From IMG/VR virus record IMGVR_UViG_3300043426_000266, positions 1 to 64,000 of that record: 64,000 nt of DNA, one strand, 5' to 3'. This document shows, piece by piece, positions 16,758 to 41,590 of the stretch. The position numbers and the translations under genes are program-made. Under the pieces are notes generated by a model. It ran no database searches. It was not told the DNA's origin and worked only from the letters and a program-made list of their open reading frames with translations. Numbering within the stretch: the stretch's first letter is position 1; each line of letters starts with the position of its first letter.

Positions 16758-17765
16758 ATGGAAACATTAAACACAGGTAAACCGCAGGACCTCTTTAATC
16801 TAGTGGAAACTATTAGCCAACTAAAAGTTCCTAAGTTTAGAACAGAGATGGAAGAAGCTTTAGTCAAAGTTCTTCGTCAGATCACTTCTGAGGAATTTGC
16901 AAAAACAGTTATCTTATTAGGTGGTCGTCAGAGTGAGATTTCTTATCTAACGACATTGTATACCGAATCACAAAAACCAGCGCGTCCGATCGACGACGGT
17001 TTCTGGACATCTTTGAGAAAATCTGGAATCGCAAACAAACAAGCATCCGAACCATTAACTTTAAACACAGAGAGAATAAAAATGTCTCGCACACCAGGTA
17101 AATTCATTGTCATCGAAGGTGGTGACTTTTGTGGTAAAACAACTTTCGCGGCTCAGTTAGAGCGAGTTCTTTTATATCGGGGTCTAAGCCTCAATCAATT
17201 ACGTTTGCCTGGAGGCGATCCACAGGGCGAACAAATCCGTAAAGTATTAGTTGGTACTGAGTTGAATGCGCTCGCAAGAGCTTATCTATTCGCAGCTAAT
17301 CGCAGTCATCTTTCAGACCATGTGCTTAAGCCTTTGTTGAAACTTGGGCAAGGGTTTATTTGTACACGTTGGAAATGGTCATCTAACGTTTACCAGGGTT
17401 ACGATCGTCTTACTAATCAAATCGATCTATTAACTGATGTAGTTAATCCTGATTTGTATATTTTACTTGAATGCACAGATGAAGTAATGAAAATGGGTTT
17501 AGAAGCCAAAAAGAAACTAGGTGACCCGATTACAGGCGATGAAGTCGATTTAATGGATGAGGAAAACACCAAGAATTATTTAGAAATCAAAGAACGTTAT
17601 CAGCACGAGTACGATGTTCATGGTGGAGTTAAATTTAAGTTCATTTATAATGAAGGCCTATCCGTTCCAACTGATAAGGAATTTATCGAGAAGTTTAAAC
17701 CCGCGTTGGATTGGCTGGGGTATTTTGAACATCCTCAGGTGATAGACTTTCCAAATGAAACCTAG
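16758..17765 (+). CDS. tmk: Thymidylate kinase with N-terminal extension
   Basis: FIVIEGGDFCGKTT P-loop, ARAYLFAANR, TRW..SNVYQG, PDLYILL. Confidence 0.85.
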   Translation: METLNTGKPQDLFNLVETISQLKVPKFRTEMEEALVKVLRQITSEEFAKTVILLGGRQSEISYLTTLYTESQKPARPIDDGFWTSLRKSGIANKQASEPLTLNTERIKMSRTPGKFIVIEGGDFCGKTTFAAQLERVLLYRGLSLNQLRLPGGDPQGEQIRKVLVGTELNALARAYLFAANRSHLSDHVLKPLLKLGQGFICTRWKWSSNVYQGYDRLTNQIDLLTDVVNPDLYILLECTDEVMKMGLEAKKKLGDPITGDEVDLMDEENTKNYLEIKERYQHEYDVHGGVKFKFIYNEGLSVPTDKEFIEKFKPALDWLGYFEHPQVIDFPNET

Positions 17766-17867: not shown

Positions 17868-18320
17868 ATGTTAGATTTTGAAAACGAAATACAGATCCAT
17901 GTGAATCGTGATGGTAAACACTATGTTGGAGTAATCAAGGCAGGATACCATAATTGGGCAGAGAGTCTAGGTAGTCTTGAGCCTGGTGCGCGTGATCTCT
18001 GGGTGAGAATCACTGAGACTATTTTTGATGACATTGAAAAGATGAAATCTCAATCCGTCAGTTTTCCTCAGTTTGAAGAAACTGATATTAAATTACATCC
18101 TCTTAAAGATATTCTTACTAAGGATCATAAACTTTGTGGTAAGATGTTAAAATTCCTTGTTAAACAGGACATGTTAACCGGCAATAGTTTTGTGAGTACT
18201 TATAAGGGGTTTGAGGATGATTTTCTCAAAGAGGTCGAACTTAACCTTCGCTTGGTTTGGTCAGCGAAATTAGACTTAGTAGATCGTCGAAATCGTCTAA
18301 CTCATTTCCAAATTAAATAA
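17868..18320 (+). CDS. Hypothetical protein
   Basis: 150-aa ORF ending before a terminator. Confidence 0.7.
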   Translation: MLDFENEIQIHVNRDGKHYVGVIKAGYHNWAESLGSLEPGARDLWVRITETIFDDIEKMKSQSVSFPQFEETDIKLHPLKDILTKDHKLCGKMLKFLVKQDMLTGNSFVSTYKGFEDDFLKEVELNLRLVWSAKLDLVDRRNRLTHFQIK

Positions 18321-18326
18321 ATAATC

Positions 18327-18346
18327 AAGAGCCCCTAGGGGCTCTT
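18327..18346. terminator. Perfect 20-bp palindromic terminator
   Basis: AAGAGCCCCTAGGGGCTCTT. Confidence 0.8.
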
Positions 18347-18392
18347 TTGTTTTATATCGAATTTTTATGACTACAACCCTAGGAGGAATCCA

Positions 18393-18651
18393 ATGCTACC
18401 TGAACTAAGACATCGCATAAAGTTCAGTATAAAGATGAGAATACACTCGTTGCTACAATCGATTCAGTAAATGATGGTGTAATTGAATATACACTTATAG
18501 ATTAAAAAAGGGAGGGGGAATAAATATGTTTTTGATTACTGGAGGGTTAGGTAAGATTGGTACCATTCTTCGATCAAATCTTGAAGAGTTAATTGATGCT
18601 GATCCAACCTCGCTTGGTTATATGGGTGAGTTTACACCGGCTGAGGTTTAA
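18393..18651 (+). pseudogene. Fragmented remnant of the MLP.LR/SLGY paralog family
   Basis: AGGAGG RBS and MLPELRHRI, broken by a frameshift; a second piece (18526-18651) ends DPTSLGYMGEF; late TATG 27 nt upstream. Confidence 0.45.
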
Positions 18652-18664
18652 GTAAAACGTGCAT

Positions 18665-18692
18665 AAACGGTTGGGGCTAACCCCAACCGTTT
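18665..18692 (+). terminator. Hairpin, terminator-like
   Basis: AAACGGTTGGGG-CTAA-CCCCAACCGTTT. Confidence 0.65.
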
Positions 18693-18718
18693 TCTATTAT
18701 TTCAATTGGAGACGAGAT

Positions 18719-18827
18719 ATGTCTAAAATAACCGATTTAACCTCAGATACACTTATAGAGGGTAATGAGTTAGTCTACGTTGTTGATGGTGATGCTGACA
18801 AGAAAGTAACACTTAATCAAGTTAAAG
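18719..18827 (+). repeat. 109-bp direct repeat, copy 1
   Basis: 3 mismatches versus 21445-21553. Confidence 0.95.
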
Positions 18828-20866
18828 AATTTGCTTCTGCTGGGTCAGTTTCAGCTAATATTGTTAGTTATGTTCCTGCTGATAATGCTGTGGTTGTTCC
18901 AAAAGTAACTCCGGAAGTAATTAATGCTGAAACAGCCTGGGATGGGCAATATTTAAGCGGCAATGGTCCTCTTACGACTGTTATGGCAAACGGTGGTTCG
19001 GTACCTTACGCTATAGCAGGTATTAAATTTCCTATTCCAGCCGGTGGTACTTTAGACGTTGACTTTACCGAAATGGGTCTAGCAGATGATGACGTTGTTA
19101 TTTTCTCTTTACTAAAACAAGACACCACTGTTGCTCAGTTTATGGACGCTGTTATGTCTGGTCAAATTGAGATGGCTAACCTAGGAGCATTTGGTACTAA
19201 TATTTTTTCGGCTACTCCAACCGGATTTAATTTAGGTACTTTTTATCAAATCCCAGATGTAGAACCAGGCGTTTCAGTGAGGCAGAAGCCACTCCCTATT
19301 CTCGGTAAAATAACTTTATACTTTTATAGTTATATTGAATATGCAGCTATTGCCTACGGGGTTACGGTTGAAGAATTACTCGCGATGGAGCCTGAATTTG
19401 GCATGTCGGTATATGCTAACCTTAAAGTAATGATGAGTTTACCAGAAGGTGGTGTGTTCCCGGATGATTTGGAGATGCTTTTACCATATACCAATGAAAT
19501 TACCACTATGCATATATTGGTTGGTAGCGTTGATGGCACTATGCCGTATGAGTTATCAGTAGGGGAAAGATTTTCTTTAGATGCATCTACCACCACGCAT
19601 ATTTTACCAGCTGATATTAAAGATGGAACTTTTTTAAAAATAGAAGAGCCTTGTGTCTTATTGGGTAAATCTCTTAAAGCTGGTGATTACTTTTTAGTTC
19701 ACAGTAATTTAAGTGAAGGTATGGTGGTTAGATTACCAACAACAATTCCAATTGGGGAAACCCCAGCACCAGCTGGTAGATTTCTAGGTTTGAGTTACAG
19801 TTACCCAGAAAACCCAATAGAGGGCGATTGGTTTATTCAACCAGCGACATCTCCAGATTCAGTTAACTTTAACACTATGCTTGTTTTTAATGATGGTATT
19901 TGGAAAGTAACTGGTTATGTTCCACAATCACAGGGCAATGTAGATAGATTTGCAGGAATTACTTATAATTCTTCGACTAATAGAATAGAAAGCACCAGCG
20001 GCACGCCAGTAGCAGGTTGGCTTGGGGCTAGCTACTCTGCCCCTATACTTTATTCGTCAACAGAAAGAAGTATTTATTACCATCGCGGCGAATTAGCTTT
20101 AAAAGCCTCGGAGGGTGGCTCCTGGACTGATCTATTACGTAGCGCTGTAAACATAAATTATCTTAGCACCCAATATGACAATTACCCAGTTACTATGGGT
20201 TCTGTGAAAGCTGGTTTGCTTGGTGCTAAGGATTGGAGCAATATAACTAGTAAGCCAGATTATGTTATACGGCAACCCACCAACGTGTTTACAATTTTTG
20301 ATAAATATGAATACTATGCTGACCAGAGTGGCATCGCCGCACCATTTATTTTACGCGGCGCAGCTATCGAGCAGCCGCAGTGGGGTGGTGGGTTAATATA
20401 TGGACAAATGGTGCCAGGGTCGGCATTAGCTTTCTATACGTCTGGTACTGGGCTTAATGGTAAAATAGCTTCAATTGAGGTGGCTATAGATTCACACCCA
20501 GATACTAATACTTTTGTGATAAATTTTAAAAACTCAACCAACGATGTTGGAAATTTGGTTATTAATAAACCCAATCCTACTACCATAGCTTTTGGTAACA
20601 ACACCATTACAAATTCAATCTCTTTAACAAGTATAGCTAAATATAAAATATGTATAGAATTCGGTAATACCGAAACTGGTAGTGAAGCTGGTATTAAAGT
20701 TTATCTTATTTGTAGAGATGGGCTCAAGGATATTAAACACATTTTGTTTGATGAGGTCACTAATATTTCCTTCCAGTACCCTACCCCTAGTAGTTTCCAC
20801 ATATCGGCTAGTGCTGGTAATGTTGATAACATTAGAATACATTCTGTTAAGTATCAAGGATCTTAA
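18719..20866 (+). CDS. Accessory tail fibre / receptor-binding-like protein A
   Basis: Start moved from 18659 to 18719 (GGAG RBS). N-terminal fibre-anchor-like motif; followed by a chaperone-like gene. Confidence 0.55.
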   Translation: MSKITDLTSDTLIEGNELVYVVDGDADKKVTLNQVKEFASAGSVSANIVSYVPADNAVVVPKVTPEVINAETAWDGQYLSGNGPLTTVMANGGSVPYAIAGIKFPIPAGGTLDVDFTEMGLADDDVVIFSLLKQDTTVAQFMDAVMSGQIEMANLGAFGTNIFSATPTGFNLGTFYQIPDVEPGVSVRQKPLPILGKITLYFYSYIEYAAIAYGVTVEELLAMEPEFGMSVYANLKVMMSLPEGGVFPDDLEMLLPYTNEITTMHILVGSVDGTMPYELSVGERFSLDASTTTHILPADIKDGTFLKIEEPCVLLGKSLKAGDYFLVHSNLSEGMVVRLPTTIPIGETPAPAGRFLGLSYSYPENPIEGDWFIQPATSPDSVNFNTMLVFNDGIWKVTGYVPQSQGNVDRFAGITYNSSTNRIESTSGTPVAGWLGASYSAPILYSSTERSIYYHRGELALKASEGGSWTDLLRSAVNINYLSTQYDNYPVTMGSVKAGLLGAKDWSNITSKPDYVIRQPTNVFTIFDKYEYYADQSGIAAPFILRGAAIEQPQWGGGLIYGQMVPGSALAFYTSGTGLNGKIASIEVAIDSHPDTNTFVINFKNSTNDVGNLVINKPNPTTIAFGNNTITNSISLTSIAKYKICIEFGNTETGSEAGIKVYLICRDGLKDIKHILFDEVTNISFQYPTPSSFHISASAGNVDNIRIHSVKYQGS

Positions 20867-20868
20867 TT

Positions 20869-21330
20869 ATGAGTAATATATTTAATTTTAACCCCACTCC
20901 ATCGGTACCTTTAGATTTTAAAGGTAAACCAGTTAATCAAATTACGGTTGAGCTTTTAAAAGCAGGTTTCATTCCTTTTAAAAAGGGTGCTGATTTTGTT
21001 TTAATAGGTGGTGATGCGGCAGCAGCTCAACTTATCATTGATGCATATGAGGTTCCTTTACCTAATCTAACCCCTAGACAGTTTGATTTACTTCTAGGGT
21101 ATACCGGGTTATACGATGCTATCCCAGCGGCTTTAGATCACATCAAAACCATTGATAATGATCTATACCTTCATTGTCGTAGTCAGCTTGATAAAGCCGC
21201 CTTCTTCGAGTGGGTAAAGGCAATTGCACTTTATACCCAATTGAAACCCATTCTTATAGTAATCAATCCAGCTTTAGATTATACCGATGAACAGTTAAAA
21301 ACTCATTGGCTAAATGTCTACACAATGTAA
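20869..21330 (+). CDS. Tail fibre assembly chaperone-like protein A
   Basis: LPNLTPRQFDLLL..GL matches LKPLTRRQFKLTLL..GM of the main fibre chaperone. Confidence 0.6.
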   Translation: MSNIFNFNPTPSVPLDFKGKPVNQITVELLKAGFIPFKKGADFVLIGGDAAAAQLIIDAYEVPLPNLTPRQFDLLLGYTGLYDAIPAALDHIKTIDNDLYLHCRSQLDKAAFFEWVKAIALYTQLKPILIVINPALDYTDEQLKTHWLNVYTM

Positions 21331-21343
21331 AACCAGCATAACT

Positions 21344-21371
21344 AAATAGCGTCCCCTAGGGGACGCTATTT
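21344..21371. terminator. Perfect 28-bp palindromic terminator
   Basis: AAATAGCGTCCCCTAGGGGACGCTATTT; contains the whole 24-mer at 2000. Confidence 0.85.
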
Positions 21372-21444
21372 TTCTAGGGCTTTTGCCCCTTCTACTTTTA
21401 TTTCGCATTTAAGTATTTTTATGAAAATTATGTAGGATAAAGAT

Positions 21445-21553
21445 ATGTCTAAAGTAACCGATTTAACCTCAGATACACTTATAGAGGGTAATGAGTTAAT
21501 CTACGTTGTTGATGGTGATGCTGACAAGAAAGTAACACTTAATCAAATTAAAG
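21445..21553 (+). repeat. 109-bp direct repeat, copy 2
   Basis: See 18719-18827. Confidence 0.95.
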
Positions 21554-22536
21554 CCTTTACTGGTGGTGGGTCAGGTGGTAGCTCAGGTGGTGGAATCAAC
21601 GTTATTGAATATGACCCATCTTTGCATGAAGTTATAACCGATACAGTAGTTGGTACTGACTTTGAGCCGACAAGACCAAATATGGTTGACGACATACCTA
21701 CGTCTAGTTGGAATCCGACAACAGGCGCAATGGGTGTTGCAAACGCACCACAGACTGTAGCGTTACCAAACAACCAAGCTAGTTATGTTGGGTTGCGCGT
21801 GACCCGACCGTTGGTCGGTATGCGTGGTTCATTCACGATAGACGCTAGTTTGTGCGAAGATGCGTGGGGCTTTGCGTTGTTACGGTACCAACCTCTTGGT
21901 GGTTTCCCAATAGATTTGGGGTTATACCTAGCAAATCAACACTACAATACGGTGGAAGACCCAAGTTTAGCGCAGCCGAATACGTTTGGTACATTTTTAA
22001 AAGAAGATGATACTTACGAAAGACGATCTTGGGTTTCAGATATATTTACAGACGCGTATGGAGCAAGTAGGGACAGTTATTCGACTAAACCACAGGGCGT
22101 ATATACGTTCATTGTCGGCGGGATAGTAGATTTCTACATGGTAGCGGCGGGATTCACTTATGAACAAGCTGTAGATTTTTTCACAGACAATTTCCCTAAT
22201 GATGTTGAGTCAATACTGGCACGTACCATAGTGTTCAACGTAGAGCTTGGATTTGGACTAGAGTTGAAAGCCAACACACCATATTTACACTTCTTTATGA
22301 ACGCCTACCATAAAGCATCACAGACAGGTCTACACCTACTTAACCCGACATCACAACTCACTATCACTTATGATTTAGAAGAAGTTGGTAATGCACCACC
22401 TACGGAAGCAGTCGATGGAGATTTCCTACACCTACTTGGTAATGCAAAACTACTCGGTAAGGACTTAGCAAGTGGGGATTTTGTTCAGCTATACGATAAT
22501 AAAACCAAGTTTATTGTTCATAGCAATCAGCCATAG
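21445..22536 (+). CDS. Accessory tail fibre / receptor-binding-like protein B
   Basis: Same N-terminal 36 aa as protein A; Gly linker; ends with a module also found inside A; TATG 25 nt upstream. Confidence 0.55.
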   Translation: MSKVTDLTSDTLIEGNELIYVVDGDADKKVTLNQIKAFTGGGSGGSSGGGINVIEYDPSLHEVITDTVVGTDFEPTRPNMVDDIPTSSWNPTTGAMGVANAPQTVALPNNQASYVGLRVTRPLVGMRGSFTIDASLCEDAWGFALLRYQPLGGFPIDLGLYLANQHYNTVEDPSLAQPNTFGTFLKEDDTYERRSWVSDIFTDAYGASRDSYSTKPQGVYTFIVGGIVDFYMVAAGFTYEQAVDFFTDNFPNDVESILARTIVFNVELGFGLELKANTPYLHFFMNAYHKASQTGLHLLNPTSQLTITYDLEEVGNAPPTEAVDGDFLHLLGNAKLLGKDLASGDFVQLYDNKTKFIVHSNQP

Positions 22537-22545
22537 GAGTAACTC

Positions 22546-22968
22546 ATGCTTAATATTTATGGTTTAGATCAGCAACAAGTAGTAAATGAGTTGCTTAAAA
22601 ACAAGATTCTTGCAGCAGTTCATAATAATCAAATTATCATTATGAACGGCAAGGTAGAACAAGCACAGTCTGTCATTGGTCGTATGTACTACAGTATGCC
22701 AAATCTACTTCCTACACAGTTTTATTTCTTGCTTGCTAAGAGTGGACTTGATACTGCAATCGATGCGTTGCTTACTTCGTTGCAAAGTGAAGATTTAGAT
22801 AAGTATGCAACTTACAAAGCTTACTTAAATGGTGCTCGTTTTTACGAGTTTGATAAAGCAATTGCAATGCTTACTCAAGCAGGGCCGATTATTGCGCAAG
22901 CATATCCTGGTTTAGATTTATCTATTCCTACCTTAAAATCACTGTGGTTACAAGCTGCGAAGTTTTAA
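22546..22968 (+). CDS. Tail fibre assembly chaperone-like protein B
   Basis: MPNLLPTQFYFLL..SGL and A.FYEF..A..M align with chaperone A. Confidence 0.6.
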   Translation: MLNIYGLDQQQVVNELLKNKILAAVHNNQIIIMNGKVEQAQSVIGRMYYSMPNLLPTQFYFLLAKSGLDTAIDALLTSLQSEDLDKYATYKAYLNGARFYEFDKAIAMLTQAGPIIAQAYPGLDLSIPTLKSLWLQAAKF

Positions 22969-22972
22969 CATA

Positions 22973-23006
22973 AAGTTAATGCTCCCCAATTGGGGAGCAT
23001 TAACTT
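22973..23006. terminator. Perfect 34-bp palindromic bidirectional terminator
   Basis: AAGTTAATGCTCCCCAATTGGGGAGCATTAACTT between convergent genes. Confidence 0.85.
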
Positions 23007-23013
23007 GTTATTA

Positions 23014-24567
23014 TCAATTATCGAAAAATTCTTCACCACCAACATTAGAGATGTTACCCGTTAAACGATTTGTAAAACGAGGTTTACCTCCAACATCCCA
23101 ACGACAGAATCCAATCTTAGATGTTAAGTAAACACAGAACTTCATGATCTCATCAGGTTGATTACCCGGTTTACGATGTTTACCGCGTTGCCAAGTAATA
23201 TACTTCTTATCTCCAACTGTTACAAACGCTTGATAGATTTCCATATCCACTTCATTGTGCACGGTACGACAGTCTAGATAATAACCTAGTTCGCGTACAG
23301 CTTTAACTAGGAACTGTTCACCCTCACGTAGTTTGGTTTGGGCGTCGGAAGACATCTGCCAAGCAGTCATCAAAGCATACTTGTGTTTTAGAGCATGAGC
23401 TTGCAAACGTTTCATTAGATCACGTTTATCAGAGCCTGAGCCTGAACTTGCGATACATCCTTTTGTTGACATACGACCCGCATAGTCTAAAGATACGAAA
23501 TGAACTTCATATCCCATGTCTTCATACTTTTTAATAGTATCAAAGTATTCATCAACACCAAATGTAGATGCATCATGCTGCTCAATAAAACCATGGATTT
23601 TATCTTTACCAGATAACTTACCTTCCATGTATGCTGCATATTCATCTAAATCGTTATCAGTCATCCCGATAATTGAAAACTCTTTACCCGTCTCTTGCTC
23701 TTTATAGTATTTTAAAAGCTGTTGAGTATCTCCGAGGTAATTGTTCTCAATGGTGATGTGGATCGCACAAGCTTTACGTTGCTCTTCCGGCATCTTCTTA
23801 GAACGTTCTAGGATATAAGTTGGTTTGTTAAACTCAATCGCCTCAGCAAATGCGTTCATTAGACGACCAGACTTGTATGAATGACCCATAGCTGAGATCA
23901 GTACAGTCTCACCACGACGTTGACCTTGATGGTCTCCAAAGAGGTTATTCCAACCTTGTAATCCAAAAGTTAAAATACCATCTAAAGAATACTCTACCAT
24001 CCCTGCAGCAAGTGTACGGCGAATGTCAGCTTTAGATGTAAAGTCTACTGAGCCAATATAGGCTGCATTAATAGCACCCCCACGAATTGTTCGTTGGGTC
24101 ATTTCTGATAACTCAGAAAGAATCGTGGTTTCTTTTTCGGCACCTAATTCAGTCATACGGTAAGCAAATCGAGCATTATCCATATGACTTAACATTTGCA
24201 ATTTATTCTTGTACAAACTACATGTTGTTTTCAATCCCTTTAAACGTTTATAAAGAGATTTTTCATCAGTTGTTTCAATCACACTTTGAATTGATTTTAA
24301 AGTATCATCTTCACTTTTCAATTTTAATTTCAATTGAGCATCAAGAAGACTTCGGTCATAATCCTTAATGTTGAGTTGCCAATTGATAATACTCTTTAAT
24401 TCAGTAAGGACATCTGAACCAACATCTAGATTAAGAGATTTTTGAGACTTCGTAACGTCTAGGGTTTCTTTTGCAATTTGTGCTGCAGATTCAAATTCGC
24501 TCGCACTTACACTGTTACTTAAATAAAGTAAGGCGATACAGCTTGTTAGAAAATGTTTAATATCCAT
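23014..24567 (-). CDS. dnaB: DnaB-like replicative helicase
   Basis: Variant Walker A (LISAMGHSYKSG), FVSLDY Walker B, TAWQMS, RGKHR; divergent from the gene preceding the capsid gene, as in phiKZ. Start trimmed to MDIKHF. Confidence 0.8.
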   Translation of the reverse strand: MDIKHFLTSCIALLYLSNSVSASEFESAAQIAKETLDVTKSQKSLNLDVGSDVLTELKSIINWQLNIKDYDRSLLDAQLKLKLKSEDDTLKSIQSVIETTDEKSLYKRLKGLKTTCSLYKNKLQMLSHMDNARFAYRMTELGAEKETTILSELSEMTQRTIRGGAINAAYIGSVDFTSKADIRRTLAAGMVEYSLDGILTFGLQGWNNLFGDHQGQRRGETVLISAMGHSYKSGRLMNAFAEAIEFNKPTYILERSKKMPEEQRKACAIHITIENNYLGDTQQLLKYYKEQETGKEFSIIGMTDNDLDEYAAYMEGKLSGKDKIHGFIEQHDASTFGVDEYFDTIKKYEDMGYEVHFVSLDYAGRMSTKGCIASSGSGSDKRDLMKRLQAHALKHKYALMTAWQMSSDAQTKLREGEQFLVKAVRELGYYLDCRTVHNEVDMEIYQAFVTVGDKKYITWQRGKHRKPGNQPDEIMKFCVYLTSKIGFCRWDVGGKPRFTNRLTGNISNVGGEEFFDN

Positions 24568-24598
24568 AACGGATCCATTAATGTAGTGAGGCGAAATT

Positions 24599-25195
24599 AT
24601 GACAGGAATATATCCAACGGGAGGTTTTACTAATGAAGTCGTTCCATCGGTAAATATCAAGGATACTTATTTTATTCCTAACTGGTTACAGGACGCATTA
24701 GACGCCAATAATGTAACTGCGGATATTCTGGGTGATTGCGAAAAGTTAAGTAGCATATTAACTGTTGAAGATGTTAAATTCTACAATTCGCAAATCAGTT
24801 TAATTAGACAAATCTCGTCGCGTATTGGGTTGGTTCAAGATCTAGAGCCACTATTTATATACCCACATCCAACCCCGGTGGTTGAATGTCCCGAACCAAC
24901 AAACCCATTATATGAAAATACAGTGTCTGTAATAGATGCGGTTTCTCCTTTTATTAGAGAGACTTCTGATGATGCAAATAAAAACGTATTATCGGCTTTG
25001 TATCTTATTTTAAACTTTTCATTGCAGCGAGATAAAGTGTTTGTATCTTTCGGCCTAGGTGATCAAAATACTGCTATTGACAAAAATCAACAAGCGTATG
25101 AAGATCTAGCCACATTTTTAATTCGTGAACAGGGGATTAAAGTAACAGCCAGCACTCAAGTGTTTAAAAAAATACTAGAATGTAGAAGAAGTTAA
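24599..25195 (+). CDS. Conserved protein upstream of the major capsid gene
   Basis: Position equivalent to phiKZ gp119 (recalled synteny); start uncertain. Confidence 0.6.
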   Translation: MTGIYPTGGFTNEVVPSVNIKDTYFIPNWLQDALDANNVTADILGDCEKLSSILTVEDVKFYNSQISLIRQISSRIGLVQDLEPLFIYPHPTPVVECPEPTNPLYENTVSVIDAVSPFIRETSDDANKNVLSALYLILNFSLQRDKVFVSFGLGDQNTAIDKNQQAYEDLATFLIREQGIKVTASTQVFKKILECRRS

Positions 25196-35763: not shown

Positions 35764-37989
35764 ATGTCTCAGAAACTTCTTGAAGTCTACAAGACTTCGA
35801 CAATCGCATTGGCGCACAGTGTTGTGGTAAATCACCCTCATGTTGGAATGTCGATCAACAAGATGCTAAAAGAAAAAAAGTATGGTGTCTATACCAATGA
35901 ACATAACCGTTCAACTTGGAAAATGTACTTAAATATGGCTGGGTTATATCATCAATATGATCATGATCAAATTCATAAAATTAACGTGGAGCTTGGTTTG
36001 GGTCTAACGGATCCAACAATTAATCGTTCTAAAATGATTATTCGAGTTGCAGGTGATAGCGGTCAACTTGAACGAGAGTTTACGGTTGAAAATATTTCGT
36101 CTGAAACAGCAGATGTAAGTATCTCTAAAGAGTATCAGCCTGGAAGTCGTGCATATAATGAATTGGTTGGTGTGTACTCTGAGTTTGAGAATTTAATTCA
36201 GGGAATTTTACATCCGATTCCATTGGACGTGTCGACGAACGCTGATGAGTATGAAGTACTCCATGCTGGTGGATATTATAAAACTCGTTTAGATACTTTG
36301 AGTTCTCAATATGCGTATATTAAAAGTCAACGTTTGGTTGATCAACAAGCAACGCTTATTGAAGATTGGGAAGAAAGTTTAGTTGGTGATATAAATCACT
36401 TCACTAAAAACTTCTTTAGGCAACATTATAATCCAGTCTACGGTGAGTTTAATGATTTATACGTAGCACAAAGTTTAGGGTTATATTATTTGAATCTTCC
36501 AACTTTGATTATGCAATTGCGTTTAAATAAAGTTAAAACAAGAGAGACACATTCAACACATGTTCAATTATACCTTGATTCATTTTCCGGGTTAGGGCAA
36601 TATATCAGCTATCTAACTCGTGATCAAGTCATGTTTTTATATCGTAATCTAGATTGGCTAATTGCCAACTTTGGTAAGCAAAAGACATTTGATATACTGT
36701 TAGATGTGTTAATTTATTCCCGACGCATCCCAGCAATCTTTTATAACAGCATTCATCGTTTAGAGAATATGCCTGGACAACTTGAACCAGATACGCGGTT
36801 TACAAAAGAGTATGGTTTGGTTCGACCAATTGGTGATGGTAAAACAACTTTAACACCAGAGGAAATGGTGGAGATGATTATTAATGTTGCAAAACATAAT
36901 AGTCAAAATGTTGACTACCAACTTTATCGAATAGAAGATTTGTCTTTAAAATCCAATAGCAATTGGGTTAAAACCAAACTTGTACATACCAAGTACACAG
37001 ATTGGGGGATGCAAGTAAACGGCAGTTACGAGGAGTTCTTATTTTGTAACTGGGTTTACTCTGCAATGAAAGGGGAGTTTACAGGGTTGGTAACGGTCTT
37101 TACGCCTTATACAAATAACAGTATTCAGCTAACCATTAAGAATGCTTTAATTATGTTCTTGTTTAGTTATGCTAAAGGTTATTTAGGTAAAAACCCAAAT
37201 CTAATCAAATCACTATATGTTCACAACATCCCTAAAACAATTGCTGAAATTGACGGTGGTGAGAATTTACGTGGCTATATTAGTGATTCACGTTTTACAG
37301 AACAAGAATATTTGTTTTTAAGAAGCAAGTCCCCAGATAGCCGCCGTTACAATTCAACTTCTCAATTTTTAGCAGAGATTGAACAGCAATGGCGCAACTA
37401 TGTTGAAAGAACCTATGCTGTATATAAAGGCGTAGGAATTCGCGCGAATGGGCAGATGGATATGGTCGCAGCTTTAATGTACCATAATGCTAAGATTGAT
37501 ATTGATCTTGGGATGTCTTATCAACAATGGTTGGCAAAATTTGGAATTCGCTCTGAAGGAGAAGAGGTTGAATACTACCAACTTCTTTGTAATAGTGTTT
37601 ATGAAGCAGTGTTATTTCCAGCGGGAACGAAAAAAGATCGAATGGAAAAAACCCATCGAGCTTTGATTAATATTCTTCGTTTCTTCTCGAGTTACTCTAT
37701 TCAGTTTATTACCGAAACAAACTCATCTGAAGTTGTGAATGTAGGTACACGTGATGTGCGTTTAGAACACATCTCAACAAGCTTTACTTCCAAAGATGAT
37801 ATTTTTATTGCAAGATACCCGACTTACTTTACAAAGGCGAAAGCTGTTCAGGAAAGTAGTTTCAACGGACATCAGTTTAGTTACTGGAGTAGCGATGAGC
37901 GGGATAATCATTTGACTCAAGAACAGCTAAGATACCTAATTCTAACTGAACAGAATGATGGAATCCTTATTAAAGGAGGAGACGTATGA
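35764..37989 (+). CDS. Virion structural protein, baseplate-wedge-like
   Basis: 741 aa, directly before the tail fibre; KYYLNMAG.YH-like motif (KMYLNMAGLYH). Confidence 0.55.
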   Translation: MSQKLLEVYKTSTIALAHSVVVNHPHVGMSINKMLKEKKYGVYTNEHNRSTWKMYLNMAGLYHQYDHDQIHKINVELGLGLTDPTINRSKMIIRVAGDSGQLEREFTVENISSETADVSISKEYQPGSRAYNELVGVYSEFENLIQGILHPIPLDVSTNADEYEVLHAGGYYKTRLDTLSSQYAYIKSQRLVDQQATLIEDWEESLVGDINHFTKNFFRQHYNPVYGEFNDLYVAQSLGLYYLNLPTLIMQLRLNKVKTRETHSTHVQLYLDSFSGLGQYISYLTRDQVMFLYRNLDWLIANFGKQKTFDILLDVLIYSRRIPAIFYNSIHRLENMPGQLEPDTRFTKEYGLVRPIGDGKTTLTPEEMVEMIINVAKHNSQNVDYQLYRIEDLSLKSNSNWVKTKLVHTKYTDWGMQVNGSYEEFLFCNWVYSAMKGEFTGLVTVFTPYTNNSIQLTIKNALIMFLFSYAKGYLGKNPNLIKSLYVHNIPKTIAEIDGGENLRGYISDSRFTEQEYLFLRSKSPDSRRYNSTSQFLAEIEQQWRNYVERTYAVYKGVGIRANGQMDMVAALMYHNAKIDIDLGMSYQQWLAKFGIRSEGEEVEYYQLLCNSVYEAVLFPAGTKKDRMEKTHRALINILRFFSSYSIQFITETNSSEVVNVGTRDVRLEHISTSFTSKDDIFIARYPTYFTKAKAVQESSFNGHQFSYWSSDERDNHLTQEQLRYLILTEQNDGILIKGGDV

Positions 37990-40900
37990 GTAATAAACCG
38001 ATATCAAGCCTGGAGGTTCGTACCCAAGACTTGACAGGCGCAGACCTGATGTTGATCTCCCAGTTTACTGCGGCTGGTTGGAGATCTGCACAAGTAACTT
38101 TAGAAGACTTTTTTACTGAAATGTTTCAGCCTGGTTCTTCTGCTGGGCAGATCATTGTGAACATGCAAGCTGAGATTAATCAGTTAGATTCACGAATGGA
38201 TATGCATGAGCATCCAGAGCTCAATACCGCTGATCCAAATTATGATCCACACTTTGGGTTCTTCTTACGGTTAGTAACCAAAGTTGCATCGAATTCAGGA
38301 TTAGTTGGTGATGGTCGAGCGGCAACACCACTGGCTTTAGATTACACTTATCTAAATACAGTTTATGCTCGTTCGAGTACAATTGTTGATAACCTTACAT
38401 CAACTTCTGCAACAACTCCATTGTCAGCAAATATGGGTCGAGAATTAAATGTTGCTAAAACCAATATTTCTGAAACTCGTCAAAACTTCGGTGAAAACAT
38501 TGTTTCGTTGATTGCAACAACGGGTTATAATTTCAACAATGCTTTGCCTGGTGATTACGTCTATCTAAATAAGCAAACCGCAACCGCAGCCAACTCACCA
38601 CCATTTGAGTACTCCACCACGTTTACTGAATGTTCGATTAATACCAGCGGTCAGCGTTTTCAGATTGCCCGAGATTATCAAACCGGACAATTTGCTGTGC
38701 GTGCGTTACAAAGTTCCACTTGGAGTGCCTGGCGTAAACAGTTGATGGAAGGTGATGTGGGTGGTGGCAGTACCGTAGGTTCTGCTGATAAATTGACCAC
38801 GCCGCGTCGTATTAACAACGTGTTTTTTGACGGTACTCAAGATATTACCATTTATACTGATAAATTGAGCACGCCGCGTCGTATTAACAACGTGTTTTTT
38901 GACGGTACTCAAGATATTACCATTTCTGCTGCTAAATTGACCACGCCGCGTCGTATTAACAATGTTTTATTCGATGGTACGCAGGACATTACCATTTCTG
39001 CTGATAAATTGAGCACGCCGCGTCGTATTAACAATGTTTTATTCGATGGTACGCAGGACATTACCATTTATGCTGATCTTCCTTATAAGGGCGCAATCTC
39101 ACCTTCTGTGATTGATGCTACTGTTACCCCAGGGTATTATGGCATCAGCAATAACCCAGAAGGTTTCTTTGAGGTAAGAGTTGTTAATGATTTAGTATTA
39201 CAATACTATCATACAACGTATTACGCCACACCCCAAGGAGAGGCTTACCCGACTCGACACCTAAGCCGGATGAAGAAAGGGGTGGATGCTTGGACTGCTT
39301 GGCAAAGTGTTGGTCCAAAAATTGAATTTGCTTCAACTGGTGGCGTGGGCGTAGTTCAGTTAAATAACAGTTTAACTTCAACTGCTACCGACCAAGCTCT
39401 AACCGCGGCAATGGGTAAAGTATTAAAAGATACGAAAGTTGACATTACTGCATTAAGAGATGCGTTTGGTAATCGCCCAATAGACTTGATTGTTCCTGCG
39501 GGTTATAACTATAACAACATCATGCCGGGTGAATTTGTTTTTCATAACGACTCAACCCTCGGTACCAATGTCGTTAACCCACCCCCATTCAACACCTGTT
39601 CTGTCTATTGCGAACGTAGCTATACTGGGGCGGGTGAACGTACCGTTACTGCGCGGGACTATGCAACAGGTCGAATTGCAACTCGCGGTCGTAATAACAA
39701 TAGCTGGAGTGCTTGGCAAACACATTTGGTTGCGGTAGATGTCGCAAATGCAATTACGACGCATAAAGCTGAAACAGACCCACATCCCCAGTATGTGACT
39801 ATTGCTGAATTGGCTGCATCAACTACAGATGGTTTAACTGAACACGTATTGGATTTAAGTACCGCTGGTTTTGATGCCAATACTTATTATCCAGTTACAG
39901 TTGCAATTGCGAACAAAGGTCGTTGTAGTTTTGAAATTGATACCCCTTTGTCGTATGCAGCTGCCCCTTGGTCAACCCATGCTGGTGGTACAATTTCTGT
40001 AATGGCGAAGTGGAGCGAGTACTCGGCCGCGTGGGGTGCGAATAATATTGATAGAACAATCGATGTTGCAGGGTTTGCGCACTGTGTTAATAGTCCTGTA
40101 ATTTCAATTACTCAATTAACGAACTCATCAACTGTTGTGTTCTTCTTACGCGGTAACACTAAATATCGCGTACGGATGACGAAAACATTGGTTCCAGTGA
40201 TTCGTACTGCGTCGTATAGTATTAGTAGTCAAACTGTTGCGCCTAAGGTATTTGATAATAGTGCACCAATCAGTATTATGAATGATAAGATTGGACAATC
40301 TCATTTAACTGACCCCGATCCTCATCCTCAGTATCTATTGGCTAGCACCGGCTCTACTCAGTATTATCCTAAAACTGGTGGTACAGTCACGGGTGATATT
40401 GTTGCCGGTACACCAGCTGCGCCTAGAGCTGTTTATGCCTACGGCAACATTACTTCTGAAAAAACAGTAACGGGTCTTGATATAGTTGCTATAAATTCCT
40501 TGAAGTCTGTGGGCCGGGTAGAGGCGCGGTATTTAACCTTGCAAAATGCGGTCTACCCTAGTAAATTACAAATTACTCCAGGTCTCAACACAGTATCCTA
40601 TTCCGTGGTCGACCTATCCCCTCTTGAACAGGGTGAGCACGTGTTTTGGAACCCAATTAGGTCTACTTGGGGGTATGGGGATCTTTTTAGCGAACAAGCG
40701 GTTGATCTTCGTTGGGATGTGTCGAATACAACCACGGTCATCGGTGAGGTGGTGGCGAGTTATGTTGTCTTTAACTCTAAAGTGGATTGGTATGATGGTT
40801 CAGAGCAGCGTAATGTAAGATACTGTCAAGTTTCTGTTGATTATATTTTGTGGAATAATCCAGGCGAAACTAGTTCTAAATTCGTTTTCCCTCTTACTTT

Positions 40901-41102
40901 TGCGCTACCGCCAATTATTGTGGCCACTCGAAAAACCTGGGATAAAGATAGCGCAGGAACGATGAATGATGCTGATGGAGGTGTGCTTGTTCAATTTGCT
41001 AATACTGCGTATTGTTACATTTCTTGCCAGGTATTCAATCCTAATTCACAAGGCGGGTTACGCGGCTTTACATTACAAATCTCTGGATGGGTGTATGCAT
41101 AA
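37986..41102 (+). CDS. Long tail fibre protein
   Basis: KL.TPRRINNV.FDGTQDITI x4, DPHPQY x2, LTSTS..LSA.MG fibre repeats, WSAW modules. Confidence 0.85.
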   Translation: MSNKPISSLEVRTQDLTGADLMLISQFTAAGWRSAQVTLEDFFTEMFQPGSSAGQIIVNMQAEINQLDSRMDMHEHPELNTADPNYDPHFGFFLRLVTKVASNSGLVGDGRAATPLALDYTYLNTVYARSSTIVDNLTSTSATTPLSANMGRELNVAKTNISETRQNFGENIVSLIATTGYNFNNALPGDYVYLNKQTATAANSPPFEYSTTFTECSINTSGQRFQIARDYQTGQFAVRALQSSTWSAWRKQLMEGDVGGGSTVGSADKLTTPRRINNVFFDGTQDITIYTDKLSTPRRINNVFFDGTQDITISAAKLTTPRRINNVLFDGTQDITISADKLSTPRRINNVLFDGTQDITIYADLPYKGAISPSVIDATVTPGYYGISNNPEGFFEVRVVNDLVLQYYHTTYYATPQGEAYPTRHLSRMKKGVDAWTAWQSVGPKIEFASTGGVGVVQLNNSLTSTATDQALTAAMGKVLKDTKVDITALRDAFGNRPIDLIVPAGYNYNNIMPGEFVFHNDSTLGTNVVNPPPFNTCSVYCERSYTGAGERTVTARDYATGRIATRGRNNNSWSAWQTHLVAVDVANAITTHKAETDPHPQYVTIAELAASTTDGLTEHVLDLSTAGFDANTYYPVTVAIANKGRCSFEIDTPLSYAAAPWSTHAGGTISVMAKWSEYSAAWGANNIDRTIDVAGFAHCVNSPVISITQLTNSSTVVFFLRGNTKYRVRMTKTLVPVIRTASYSISSQTVAPKVFDNSAPISIMNDKIGQSHLTDPDPHPQYLLASTGSTQYYPKTGGTVTGDIVAGTPAAPRAVYAYGNITSEKTVTGLDIVAINSLKSVGRVEARYLTLQNAVYPSKLQITPGLNTVSYSVVDLSPLEQGEHVFWNPIRSTWGYGDLFSEQAVDLRWDVSNTTTVIGEVVASYVVFNSKVDWYDGSEQRNVRYCQVSVDYILWNNPGETSSKFVFPLTFALPPIIVATRKTWDKDSAGTMNDADGGVLVQFANTAYCYISCQVFNPNSQGGLRGFTLQISGWVYA
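38784..39077 (+). repeat. Four tandem 72-bp units
   Basis: Units start at 38784, 38856, 38928 and 39000. Confidence 0.95.
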
Positions 41103-41590
41103 TGACGATTTATTTTAATCCCGAAAAACAAAGCTTCACCACCATGGAAGCAGCAAGTGAAAACCCTAACATGGTTGAAATAACAAATGAACAACATATA
41201 GAGCTTCTTGCTAAATTAAATCAAGGTTATTATGTTTTTCCTGATTTAACCCTATCAACTATTCGACCTTCTATTGAACATCATTGGATTGATGGTGCTT
41301 GGGTTGACCCGAGAACACCGGAGCAAAAAGAAGCGCAATATATGGCTTCTTTAAAACCGCTTACTCGTCGACAATTCAAGTTAACACTTCTCCATTATGG
41401 AATGTTGGAAACAATGGAAAGTCAAATTGCATCAATACCGGATGCTAATCTTCGTATTCAGCTCCAGATTGAGTACGCGGAATCAACAACATTCATGAGA
41501 ACTTCCCCATCAGTTGCCGCAATGGTTCAATCCTTAGGATTAACTACGAATCAGGTCAACCAGATGTGGGAGTACGGAATGAGTCAATAA
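41102..41590 (+). CDS. Tail fibre assembly chaperone
   Basis: TAATG coupling; MTIYF...EIT.EQH.ELL, then LKPLTRRQF..EY..ST.F.RTSP. Confidence 0.75.
   Translation: MTIYFNPEKQSFTTMEAASENPNMVEITNEQHIELLAKLNQGYYVFPDLTLSTIRPSIEHHWIDGAWVDPRTPEQKEAQYMASLKPLTRRQFKLTLLHYGMLETMESQIASIPDANLRIQLQIEYAESTTFMRTSPSVAAMVQSLGLTTNQVNQMWEYGMSQ

What the first reader, a model, noticed from the sequence alone, without database searches (positions are those of the whole stretch)
18719..22968. Tandem accessory fibre + chaperone cassettes with a shared plug-in anchor
Two gene pairs (715+153 aa and 363+140 aa) sit far from the main tail locus. Their first 109 bp differ at only 3 positions and then diverge abruptly. 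Both later share a module (DGTFLKI...LLGKSLKAGDYF versus DGDFLHL...LLGKDLASGDFV). B stops there, while A continues for ~380 aa in ATA-codon-rich sequence that looks foreign. The anchor resembles the N-terminus of the main fibre (ISSL...LTGADLMLI...QVTL), and both chaperones resemble the main fibre chaperone. Inference: interchangeable receptor-binding appendages compete for one docking site, and the 109-bp repeat allows recombinational deletion of cassette A or swapping of payloads, giving a host-range switch without an invertase or RT.
Basis: partly seen in the sequence, partly recalled or inferred. Interest (0 to 1): 0.7.

Follow-up and report, generated by a model that had tools for sequence, protein, structure and literature searches.

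The report
Swappable tail-fibre cassettes in jumbo phage
A phiKZ-like jumbo phage, probably of Acinetobacter, carries two adjacent "lectin-headed fibre plus helper protein" gene pairs that start with the same 38-residue attachment peptide, in a genome island where related phages hold different pairs: a clear but not surprising case of modular host-recognition evolution.

Summary
The sequence observation is real. A_fib (18719-20866, 715 aa) + A_chap (20869-21330, 153 aa) and B_fib (21445-22536, 363 aa) + B_chap (22546-22968, 140 aa) start with a direct repeat that has 3 mismatches in 109 coding bases. Identity ends at a Gly/Ser linker. The two fibres are homologous over the whole B length: a ConA-like lectin body plus a ~45-aa beta module. 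The small proteins are paralogues. Every gene of the small-protein family examined (14 of 14 loci) directly follows a gene carrying that module, including in Mu-like Acinetobacter prophage tail modules. Co-folding supports B_fib-B_chap binding (ipSAE 0.75; best control 0.00). The interval between thymidylate kinase and helicase is a hypervariable cassette island. A 97-99% identical relative lacks cassette B exactly (window 21377-23015). Relatives with 88% helicase identity carry other payloads on a homologous anchor. Three claims are not supported or only weakly: the anchor's likeness to the main-fibre N-terminus (p=0.22), the repeat-mediated deletion of A (not seen in contig-level data), and the chaperones' likeness to the main-fibre helper (E 0.014-0.03). 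Verdict: accessory receptor-binding cassettes exchanged by recombination at a shared anchor. This is a new variant of a known kind, of moderate interest. Virion location is inferred, not shown.

The parts
18327..18346 (.). Bidirectional terminator-like hairpin (CCCCTAGGGG core) closing the upstream gene
   Evidence: same core at 21344-21371 (family D6)
18665..18692 (+). 12-bp-stem hairpin plus T run just upstream of the A_fib ribosome-binding site
18715..18848 (+). Anchor repeat, copy 1 (4 nt upstream plus A_fib codons 1-43)
18719..20866 (+). A_fib, 715 aa: anchor (aa 1-38), ConA-like body homologous to B (aa ~39-291), beta module (aa ~292-340), distal extension (aa 341-715)
19592..19738 (+). 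Beta module of A_fib (DGTFLKI...GDYF), internal to the protein
19739..20863 (+). A_fib distal extension, ATA-rich (44% of Ile codons). Language-model look-alikes are phage tail or tropism proteins (lead only)
20869..21330 (+). A_chap, 153 aa, member of the small partner family
21344..21371 (.). Hairpin (CCCCTAGGGG core) after A_chap. In the close relative it abuts the helicase stop codon
21377..23015 (+). Cassette B as an indel unit (1,639 bp), absent from relatives 97-99% identical in the flanks
21441..21574 (+). Anchor repeat, copy 2
21445..22536 (+). B_fib, 363 aa: anchor (aa 1-38), Gly/Ser linker (aa 39-50), ConA-like lectin/SPRY-type beta-sandwich with helical insert (aa ~50-318), beta module (aa 319-360)
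22399..22524 (+). Beta module of B_fib (DGDFLHL...GDFVQLYDN), C-terminal
22546..22968 (+). B_chap, 140 aa. AF2 pLDDT 91. Small alpha-beta-beta-alpha N-domain plus helical C-domain
22973..23006 (.). 15-bp-stem hairpin between B_chap and the convergent helicase gene
23014..24567 (-). DnaB-like helicase (divDNAB), conserved right flank of the island. Its last ~12 nt carry 4 synonymous differences from the close relative
16758..17765 (+). Thymidylate kinase, conserved left flank of the island
37986..41102 (+). Main tail fibre (context only). Its N-terminus is not significantly like the anchor
41087..41590 (+). ORF after the main fibre (phrog_14311). Weak distant relative of A_chap and B_chap. Its homologues follow tail-fibre genes in Acinetobacter (pro)phages

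Best explanation
The window is the first 64 kb of a 205-kb phiKZ-like (chimallivirus) record. The host is probably Acinetobacter.

Between the thymidylate-kinase and DnaB-like helicase genes lies a hypervariable island of accessory receptor-binding cassettes. Each cassette encodes two proteins.

(1) An adhesin built from:
- a 38-aa N-terminal anchor;
- a flexible Gly/Ser linker;
- a ConA-like lectin body;
- a ~45-aa beta module;
- in A only, a 375-aa distal extension.

(2) A cognate 140-153-aa partner that binds the adhesin. It most likely acts as an assembly chaperone, or as a retained adaptor.

The two anchors are near-identical at the DNA level because of a recent duplication or gene conversion that ends at the linker. 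A and B should therefore attach to the same kind of virion site, which would give the particle two specificities or a mixture of them.

Cassettes are gained, lost and replaced among related phages by recombination. The anchor on one side, and the conserved 3' end of the partner gene and helicase gene on the other, are the likely homology arms.

Shown: the repeat, the homologies, the strict gene pairing, the indel polymorphism, the payload diversity, and the predicted fold and interface.

Inferred: virion location, docking by the anchor, sugar binding, the chaperone role, and the recombination route.
For: Phage type: PhiKZ major capsid protein (E 4e-127) and divDNAB helicase.

Repeat and abrupt divergence.

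Family structure of B_fib. It has 28 metagenomic homologues whose bodies are conserved from the GGGINVIEY motif to the C-terminus. Their N-termini are of at least 9 kinds, joined by Gly-rich linkers. Some members are fused to segments that hit tail-fibre or virion-structural PHROGs.

Fold: AF2 pLDDT 84. ConA-like lectin/SPRY fold, Foldseek probability 0.99, VIA Z 9-10.6 over 150-185 residues.

A body homologous to B body.

Partner family:
- More than 137 members.
- In 14 of 14 loci the partner gene directly follows the only ORF with the beta module. No other ORF in the 205-kb genome or in the flanks has the module at E<0.01.
- In an Acinetobacter Mu-like prophage the pair closes the tail module, after Baseplate_J and a gp53-like gene. 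That fibre shares only the module with B_fib (E 5e-8).
- Fibre type and partner type co-vary: the A-type homologue P0151 is followed by a partner 42% identical to A_chap. The partner of P0029 is 67% identical to B_chap although the fibres are only 32% identical.

Co-fold of B_fib with B_chap: ipSAE 0.70, 0.75 and 0.75; best of 3 controls 0.00. The three runs agree in at least 92% of contacts; partner pLDDT at least 84. In calibration the pass mark was reached by 58 of 80 solved complexes and 2 of 110 mismatched pairs.

Island variation:
- Contigs 97-99% identical in the flanks join window 21376 directly to 23016, so B is absent.
- Relatives with 88% helicase identity carry, next to the helicase, an 895-aa fibre or other B-type bodies on a homologous anchor (z=6.6), each with a partner gene.
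- Another relative (L021) also has two tandem cassettes.

Host: partner-family and main-helper homologues occur in Acinetobacter genomes and phages. GC is 38%. Samples are freshwater and wastewater.
Against: - There are no virion data.
- None of the four proteins hits any Pfam or PHROG family, and none matches GenBank phages.
- The anchor is disordered in the monomer model (pLDDT about 30) and has no demonstrated docking partner.
- The anchor is not significantly like the main-fibre N-terminus.
- The partner has no solved-structure relative. Its links to DUF4376 and to Tfa-type chaperones are weak.
- The predicted interface lies on the lectin body (residues 195-271), not on the co-conserved beta module. 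The reason for the module-partner co-occurrence is therefore unexplained.
- The B body looks globular and possibly monomeric, unlike classic trimeric fibres.
- CheckV completeness of the record is about 70%.
Confidence: 0.62

Rival explanations
1. The 109-bp direct repeat serves as a recombination switch. It deletes cassette A (2,726 bp) or swaps payloads at useful frequency, toggling host range within a population.
For: A 113-nt tract of 97% identity in direct orientation is a plausible recombination substrate. At 3 clustered sites the window's A anchor agrees with its B anchor against the relative's A anchor. One run's contig implies an A copy carrying B's base at 18728 (inference). Both hint at exchange between the copies.
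Against: In the four runs holding the window form, A, B and the flanks have similar depth, and no contig shows the repeat-to-repeat joint. The only natural indel found removes B, with ends outside the repeats. The data are contigs only and cannot exclude rare events.
Confidence: 0.15
2. The proteins are not virion parts. They are lectin-like proteins made during infection for another purpose, such as blocking receptors, superinfection exclusion or binding the cell envelope. Each would have a binding partner or inhibitor. The shared N-terminus would be a targeting, oligomerisation or processing signal.
For: There is no structural-protein signature in A or B themselves. The island lies among replication and nucleotide-metabolism genes. 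The body is a globular lectin rather than a fibre. The anchor contains a G-x-E tripeptide of the kind cut by phiKZ-type head proteases; that rests on my own knowledge and is a chance-prone motif.
Against: Relatives of the same bodies are fused to tail-fibre segments. The module-plus-partner pair sits at the end of prophage tail modules. The main-fibre helper is a weak relative of the partners.
Confidence: 0.13
3. An evolutionary accident without functional meaning. Cassette B is a recent, possibly transient insertion whose N-terminus was overwritten by A's during the recombination that inserted it. One of the two genes may be redundant or not assembled.
For: B is missing from the closest relative. 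Divergence between the two anchors (2.7%) is about equal to the divergence between strains. ATA-rich codon usage suggests foreign origin or low expression.
Against: Both genes and both partner genes are intact. The same form is present at 100% identity in two samples. A sister phage also keeps two tandem cassettes. The three anchor differences are all conservative Ile/Val changes.
Confidence: 0.1

Closest known systems
Modular receptor-binding proteins with a conserved N-terminal anchor in multi-RBP phages (e.g. Klebsiella KP32-type and jumbo phages; PMC8262889, PMC6872550)
   Same: A short conserved N-terminal attachment module is followed by an abrupt switch to unrelated specificity domains. 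Several RBP genes lie side by side. Payloads are exchanged among relatives.
   Different: The payload here is a ConA-like lectin on a Gly-rich tether, not a beta-helix depolymerase. Each RBP has its own small partner gene. The host genome is a phiKZ-like nucleus-forming-type phage, and the island lies outside the tail locus.
Fibre plus cognate chaperone host-recognition module shared by unrelated Alteromonas phages (V22 gp26/gp27, A5 gp8/gp9; PMC10579305)
   Same: A fibre gene and its downstream chaperone move together between unrelated phage types. The chaperone is better conserved than the fibre. Lectin-like heads occur.
   Different: V22-type chaperones carry DUF4376, and ours do not pass that profile. 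The only links are a weak structural match and one fusion protein (P0102). Chaperone dependence has not been tested here.
Mu G-segment / P1 C-segment (Sc + Sv/U versus Sv'/U')
   Same: One constant N-terminal fibre part is combined with alternative C-terminal parts, each with its own assembly protein, giving alternative host ranges.
   Different: There is no invertase and no inverted repeats. Both full genes are present in tandem and are presumably co-expressed. The constant part is duplicated rather than shared.
Lambda Stf/Tfa, P2 H/G and T4 gp37/gp38 fibre-helper pairs
   Same: The helper gene lies immediately downstream. The helper has a conserved half and a variable half. The pair sits at the end of the tail module in prophage relatives.
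   Different: There is no sequence or clear fold relationship. The predicted contact is with the side of a globular lectin body, not with a trimeric fibre tip.

Membership tests
Known tail-fibre assembly chaperone families (Caudo_TAP, DUF4376 / V22 gp27 type) | Significant match to the family profile | tested here: not met
   No Pfam hit for A_chap or B_chap, nor for any of the 63 aligned members scanned. DUF4376 appears only as a separate N-terminal domain in the fusion protein P0102. The AFDB DUF4376 cluster matches at E 0.037 with TM about 0.35.
Known tail-fibre assembly chaperone families (Caudo_TAP, DUF4376 / V22 gp27 type) | Gene directly downstream of its fibre gene, on the same strand, and co-inherited with it | tested here: met
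   14 of 14 loci. Fibre type and partner type co-vary.
Known tail-fibre assembly chaperone families (Caudo_TAP, DUF4376 / V22 gp27 type) | Physical binding to the fibre | tested here: inconclusive
   Prediction only: ipSAE 0.75 against 0.00 for the best control.
Known tail-fibre assembly chaperone families (Caudo_TAP, DUF4376 / V22 gp27 type) | Fibre needs the helper to fold or to become active | not testable with these tools
   Needs co-expression experiments.
phrog_14311 (family of the ORF after the main fibre) | Significant profile match | tested here: inconclusive
   A_chap E 0.02; B_chap no hit. The reverse HMM gives E 0.03. hhalign gives E 0.014.
ConA-like lectin/glucanase superfamily (legume lectin, SPRY, bacterial surface lectins) | Two-sheet jelly-roll fold covering the domain | tested here: met
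   Foldseek E 2e-4, probability 0.99. VIA Z 9-10.6 with 150-185 residues aligned over model residues 62-317. The model is a prediction (pLDDT >90 in the body).
ConA-like lectin/glucanase superfamily (legume lectin, SPRY, bacterial surface lectins) | Carbohydrate- or metal-binding residues | not tested
   Sequence identity to lectins is 6-13%, and no site mapping was attempted.
Invertible fibre switches (Mu Gin / P1 Cin type) | Serine invertase gene and flanking inverted repeats | tested here: not met
   No PF00239 match in the 205-kb record. The repeats are direct. The record may be incomplete.
Diversity-generating retroelements (Mtd type) | Reverse transcriptase with template and variable repeats | tested here: not met
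   No PF00078 match. The only repeat covers the N-terminal anchor, not a C-terminal variable region.
Multi-RBP phages with a shared N-terminal anchor | Conserved N-terminal module followed by abrupt divergence, with different payloads on the same anchor in relatives | tested here: met
   Within the genome. Across relatives: the first 53-57 aa are 76-87% identical and then unrelated. The window's anchor (type 1) and the relatives' anchor (type 4) are homologous, z=6.6.
Multi-RBP phages with a shared N-terminal anchor | Anchor docks on the tail, baseplate or another RBP | not testable with these tools
   No docking partner is identified. The anchor is disordered in the monomer model.

The most novel reading that the evidence does not exclude
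Two connected readings remain open.

(1) The ~45-aa beta module and the 140-aa protein could form a portable, previously undescribed plug-and-partner unit that lets unrelated phages (chimalliviruses, Mu-like prophages and others) mount lectin heads. The partner would stay on the virion as an adaptor or cap rather than acting only as a folding chaperone.

(2) In this jumbo phage the duplicated anchor would make A and B compete for, or mix at, one site. Particles would then be mosaics, and anchor-to-anchor recombination would shift the mix in the population. That would be bet-hedging of host range without an invertase or a retroelement.
Probability: 0.2. Interest if true: 0.65.

Novelty: new variant of a known kind. 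Interest (0 to 1): 0.45.

Why it matters
Host recognition of phiKZ-like nucleus-forming phages is poorly mapped. This locus gives a concrete, testable candidate for accessory receptor-binding proteins, and for where they are exchanged in the genome.

It defines three uncharacterised families with no Pfam or PHROG model: a tethered ConA-like lectin body, a small beta module, and a partner protein that always travels with that module. It also links them to Acinetobacter prophage tail modules.

Nature supplies a near-isogenic pair of forms: the window carries cassette B, and a 97-99% identical relative lacks it. That pair is a ready-made comparison for what one cassette contributes to host range.

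The principle itself, a conserved anchor with swappable payloads, is already well established for other phages.

Tried and rejected
- Nucleotide and protein searches of the four genes against GenBank phages found nothing.
- IMG/VR scans with the helicase, with the exact anchor sequence and with the partner profile found no close relative. The partner profile found only two prophage-like loci.
- Pfam and PHROG scans of the four proteins gave no hits.
- Testing the anchor against the main fibre: HMM search and Smith-Waterman with genome-wide and shuffle nulls. Both were negative, so the claim was rejected.
- Pairwise BLAST of the main-fibre helper against A_chap and B_chap was not significant. 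Only profile methods gave marginal values.
- Foldseek and VIA searches of solved structures with the partner model gave no meaningful match. The best were 42-residue ring-building-motif-like pieces at Z 5.7.
- Weak TnpV hits (7 of 63 members, best E 0.0017) and an AFDB hit named 'Transposase' were judged annotation noise.
- The read laying joint 20492 to 22022 (side 21 nt, depth about 7, two runs of one sample) was dismissed as a short chance or other-organism match, following the tool's own warning.
- My idea that the partner binds the beta module directly is not borne out by the 1:1 co-fold, whose interface is on residues 195-271 of B_fib. It stays open for oligomeric states.
- I first read the close relative as 'A only'. 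That was corrected: upstream of A it carries a 128-aa ORF homologous to the partner of a different cassette type.

Full report
CONTEXT

The window is the first 64 kb of a single 205,063-bp record with 38% GC. It encodes a PhiKZ-type major capsid protein (PF25620, E 4e-127) and a divergent DnaB-like helicase. It is therefore a phiKZ-like (chimallivirus) jumbo phage. The helicase is only 25-28% identical to those of GenBank relatives. CheckV rates the record about 70% complete.

THE OBSERVATION

Four same-strand ORFs are present:
- A_fib, 18719-20866, 715 aa. The mechanical ORF list starts at an upstream GTG; the ATG with a GGAG ribosome-binding site is at 18719.
- A_chap, 20869-21330, 153 aa.
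- B_fib, 21445-22536, 363 aa.
- B_chap, 22546-22968, 140 aa.

A direct repeat, 18715-18848 / 21441-21574 (134 nt, 93%), is the strongest repeat in the region. From the ATG, 109 nt differ at exactly three positions, all first-codon Ile/Val changes. Four bases upstream are also shared, and identity is lost within about 25 nt after that. The break falls where B has a Gly/Ser linker (TGGGSGGSSGGG).

The DG.FL...LLGK..GD module is shared (BLAST E about 0.01). A continues for 375 aa beyond it.

ATA makes up 44% of Ile codons in that extension, against 8.6% in the genome. It is also 30% in the rest of A, 56% in B_fib and 23% in A_chap. The bias therefore marks both cassettes, not the extension alone.

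The two small proteins are clear paralogues (35% identity, E 6e-20).

TWO RESEMBLANCE CLAIMS FARE WORSE

Anchor versus main fibre. The anchor was compared with the N-terminus of the bona fide main fibre (37986-41102; tail-fibre PHROGs and Phage_fiber_rpt). The Smith-Waterman score is 22, rank 55 of 205 N-termini in the genome, shuffle p=0.22. A profile built from anchor-like N-termini does not find the main fibre. The main fibre's N-terminus instead resembles that of a second, 1330-aa tail fibre elsewhere in the genome (z=6.1).

Small proteins versus the ORF after the main fibre (41087-41590). The link is weak but consistent:
- It is the best non-self hit of a 108-sequence family HMM in the genome, E 0.03.
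- hhalign gives E 0.014 over 78 columns.
- A_chap hits the same PHROG (phrog_14311) at E 0.02.

Homologues of that ORF lie directly after tail-fibre genes in a P2-like Acinetobacter prophage and in phage AJO2.

WHAT THE PROTEINS ARE

None of the four hits Pfam, PHROGs or GenBank phages.

B_fib has 28 metagenomic homologues. The alignment shows a body conserved from the GGGINVIEYDPS motif to the C-terminus. In front of it are at least nine unrelated N-terminal modules joined by Gly-rich linkers. Two members carry C-terminal extensions. Those extensions, and several N-terminal segments, hit tail-fibre or virion-structural PHROGs.

The AlphaFold model has mean pLDDT 84, above 90 in the body, with residues 1-48 disordered. 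It has two parts:
- A beta-sandwich with a helical insert (residues ~50-318). This matches the ConA-like superfamily: legume lectins, bacterial surface lectins and SPRY. Foldseek E 2e-4, probability 0.99; VIA Z 9-10.6 over 150-185 residues.
- A small five-strand module (residues 319-360).

A_fib is homologous to this whole body. HMMER links A 43-333 to a B-family member, and A 39-498 to four 785-817-aa proteins. hhalign gives E 1.4e-6. A therefore reads as anchor, lectin body, module, then extension. Language-model look-alikes of the extension are phage tropism and tail proteins; this is a lead only.

THE PARTNER PROTEIN

The partner family has more than 137 members, mostly 140 aa. The AF2 model (pLDDT 91) has a small alpha-beta-beta-alpha N-domain and a helical C-domain. 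It has no solved-structure relative. Its links to DUF4376 are weak (AFDB E 0.037; one fusion protein, P0102). DUF4376 is the signature of the experimentally validated V22/A5 tail-fibre chaperones (PMC10579305).

Gene pairing is strict. I examined 12 fetched loci plus the two window cassettes. In all 14 cases the partner gene is directly preceded by the only ORF that carries the beta module. The module HMM hits nothing else in the 205-kb genome or in the flanks at E<0.01. The module may be C-terminal or internal.

In an Acinetobacter Mu-like prophage the pair closes the tail module, after Mu gp45, gp46, Baseplate_J and a gp53-like gene. That fibre shares only the module with B_fib (E 5e-8).

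Fibre type and partner type co-vary.

Co-folding B_fib with B_chap gave ipSAE 0.70, 0.75 and 0.75, against 0.00 for the best of three controls. The runs agree in at least 92% of contacts, and partner pLDDT is at least 84. In calibration the pass mark was reached by 58 of 80 solved complexes and 2 of 110 mismatched pairs. The model supports binding but does not show it.

The predicted interface joins B_chap 13-35 to B_fib 195-271, which is the sheet edge and helical insert, not the beta module. Why module and partner always co-occur is therefore still unexplained.

VARIATION AMONG RELATIVES

The closest relative. Four Logan contigs from other runs are 97-99% identical to the window. They join window 21376 directly to 23016, so the 1,639-bp unit 21377-23015 is absent. 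That unit comprises 68 bp of upstream sequence, B_fib, B_chap and a hairpin. The indel ends are the hairpin after A_chap and the helicase stop codon, not the anchor repeats. The last 12 nt of the helicase gene carry four synonymous differences, including the stop codon. This suggests the right-hand crossover lay inside the helicase 3' end. Upstream of A the same relative carries a 128-aa ORF homologous to the partner of a different cassette type (E 2e-29), where the window has an unrelated 150-aa ORF.

More distant relatives (found through the helicase):
- At 88% helicase identity and 86-90% capsid-protein identity, one contig (L014) has next to the helicase an 895-aa fibre with the module plus a partner gene. 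Another (L015) has a different B-type body plus a partner gene.
- Contig L021 has two tandem cassettes between thymidylate kinase and helicase.
- Contig L020 has three fibre-like genes. The last is 63% identical to B_fib over its full length.
- Relatives at 72-75% helicase identity have no such genes at this position.

In the 88% group the fibres share an N-terminal 'type-4' anchor. Its first 53-57 residues are 76-87% identical and the proteins are then unrelated. That anchor is homologous to the window's anchor (z=6.6, p=3e-4).

The interval between thymidylate kinase and helicase is therefore a hypervariable cassette island. Payload exchange at a conserved anchor is documented across genomes.

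THE PROPOSED DELETION OF A

Four freshwater runs (two samples) hold the window form at 100% identity. Their k=31 contigs break exactly at the anchor repeat. Depths for A body / B body in the four runs are 18.9/19.7, 43.9/43.8, 15.7/19.1 and 40.8/46, similar to the flanks. No contig shows the 2,726-bp joint. These are contigs, which drop rare variants, so low-frequency recombinants are not excluded.

There are two hints of exchange between the copies:
- At three clustered synonymous sites the window's A anchor agrees with its B anchor against the relative's A anchor.
- One run's contigs imply an A copy carrying B's base at 18728 (my inference from contig ends).

No invertase or reverse transcriptase is detected in the record.

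HOST

The host is inferred, not shown. Cellular members of the partner family are in Acinetobacter genomes. Homologues of the main-fibre helper are in Acinetobacter (pro)phages. GC is 38%. The runs are freshwater and wastewater.

INTERPRETATION

The best reading is two accessory receptor-binding cassettes in a recombination-prone island.

- Each adhesin is a lectin head tethered to a short anchor. Each has a cognate partner that probably assists assembly.
- The near-identical anchors result from a recent duplication or conversion ending at the linker. They imply attachment to the same kind of site.
- Cassettes are gained, lost and replaced among relatives.
- Whether A and B compete, mix or occupy equivalent sites is untested. 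So is whether the partner leaves after assembly.

Rivals kept:
- A true repeat-driven switch (0.15).
- Non-virion lectins (0.13).
- A functionally neutral recent insertion (0.10).

COMPARISON WITH WHAT IS KNOWN

The design matches the anchor-plus-payload modularity of Klebsiella and other multi-RBP phages (PMC8262889, PMC6872550). It also matches the mobile fibre-chaperone modules of Alteromonas phages (PMC10579305). Conceptually it resembles the Mu and P1 constant/variable fibre switch, but without inversion.

It differs in four ways:
- its protein families, none of which has a curated model;
- the tethered ConA-like head;
- the strictly co-occurring beta module and partner;
- its location in a chimallivirus outside the tail locus.

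I rate it a new variant of a known kind, interest 0.45.

Noticed in passing
window 17868-18718 versus L005:1-640: The gene upstream of cassette A also differs between near-identical strains. The window has a 150-aa ORF with no relatives. The relative has a 128-aa ORF 44% identical to L021:4814-5194, the small gene following a different fibre type. There is also an 88-bp indel at 18509-18596.
   Followed up: partly
window 23016-23035: The last 12 nt of the helicase gene carry 4 synonymous differences from the 99%-identical relative, including the stop codon (TGA versus TAG). This is a local patch of divergence at the edge of the cassette-B indel.
   Followed up: partly
window 18327-18346 and 21344-21371: Hairpins with the palindromic core CCCCTAGGGG recur. 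Contigs from elsewhere in the same phage match just these 25 nt (loose ends and records of 7.6-7.7 kb). This points to a genome-wide terminator or regulatory hairpin family.
   Followed up: no
G000 C1 137252-141244 (-), locus L022:1253-5245: A second large tail-fibre protein (1330 aa, several tail-fibre PHROGs). Its N-terminus resembles that of the main fibre (z=6.1). It also gave a weak BLAST hit to the A_fib module region (E 0.005), which the module HMM did not confirm.
   Followed up: partly
L020:610-6274 and L021:3614-4801: In sister phages, three other island proteins (813, 1070 and 395 aa) share a different N-terminal domain of about 125 aa (30-36% identity). This is a second anchor type, used by tandem genes in the same island.
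   Followed up: partly
L001:13025-14329, L001:19419-21218, L003:14487-15782: Unrelated phages that carry B-type cassettes have intein-containing genes (including the terminase) and a TnsA-like endonuclease gene close to the cassette and the lysis genes.
   Followed up: no
window 41087-41590: The helper ORF after the main fibre overlaps the fibre gene by 16 nt. It is also ATA-rich (36% of Ile codons), like the accessory cassettes.
   Followed up: no
window 23014-24660 (-): The mechanical ORF for the helicase (548 aa, TTG start) overlaps the divergent 198-aa gene. Gene callers and relatives use the 517-aa start at 24567.
   Followed up: no
window 18728 (run X2): In one run the contig ending at 18744 has one differing base, and the shared repeat contig extends to the repeat's first base. 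This implies an A copy carrying B's G at this paralogue-discriminating site, while a second run of the same sample shows the window's A.
   Followed up: partly
whole record G000: CheckV completeness is about 70% and no terminal repeats were found, so the 205-kb record may be a fragment. Absence of genes such as an invertase or reverse transcriptase is therefore provisional.
   Followed up: no
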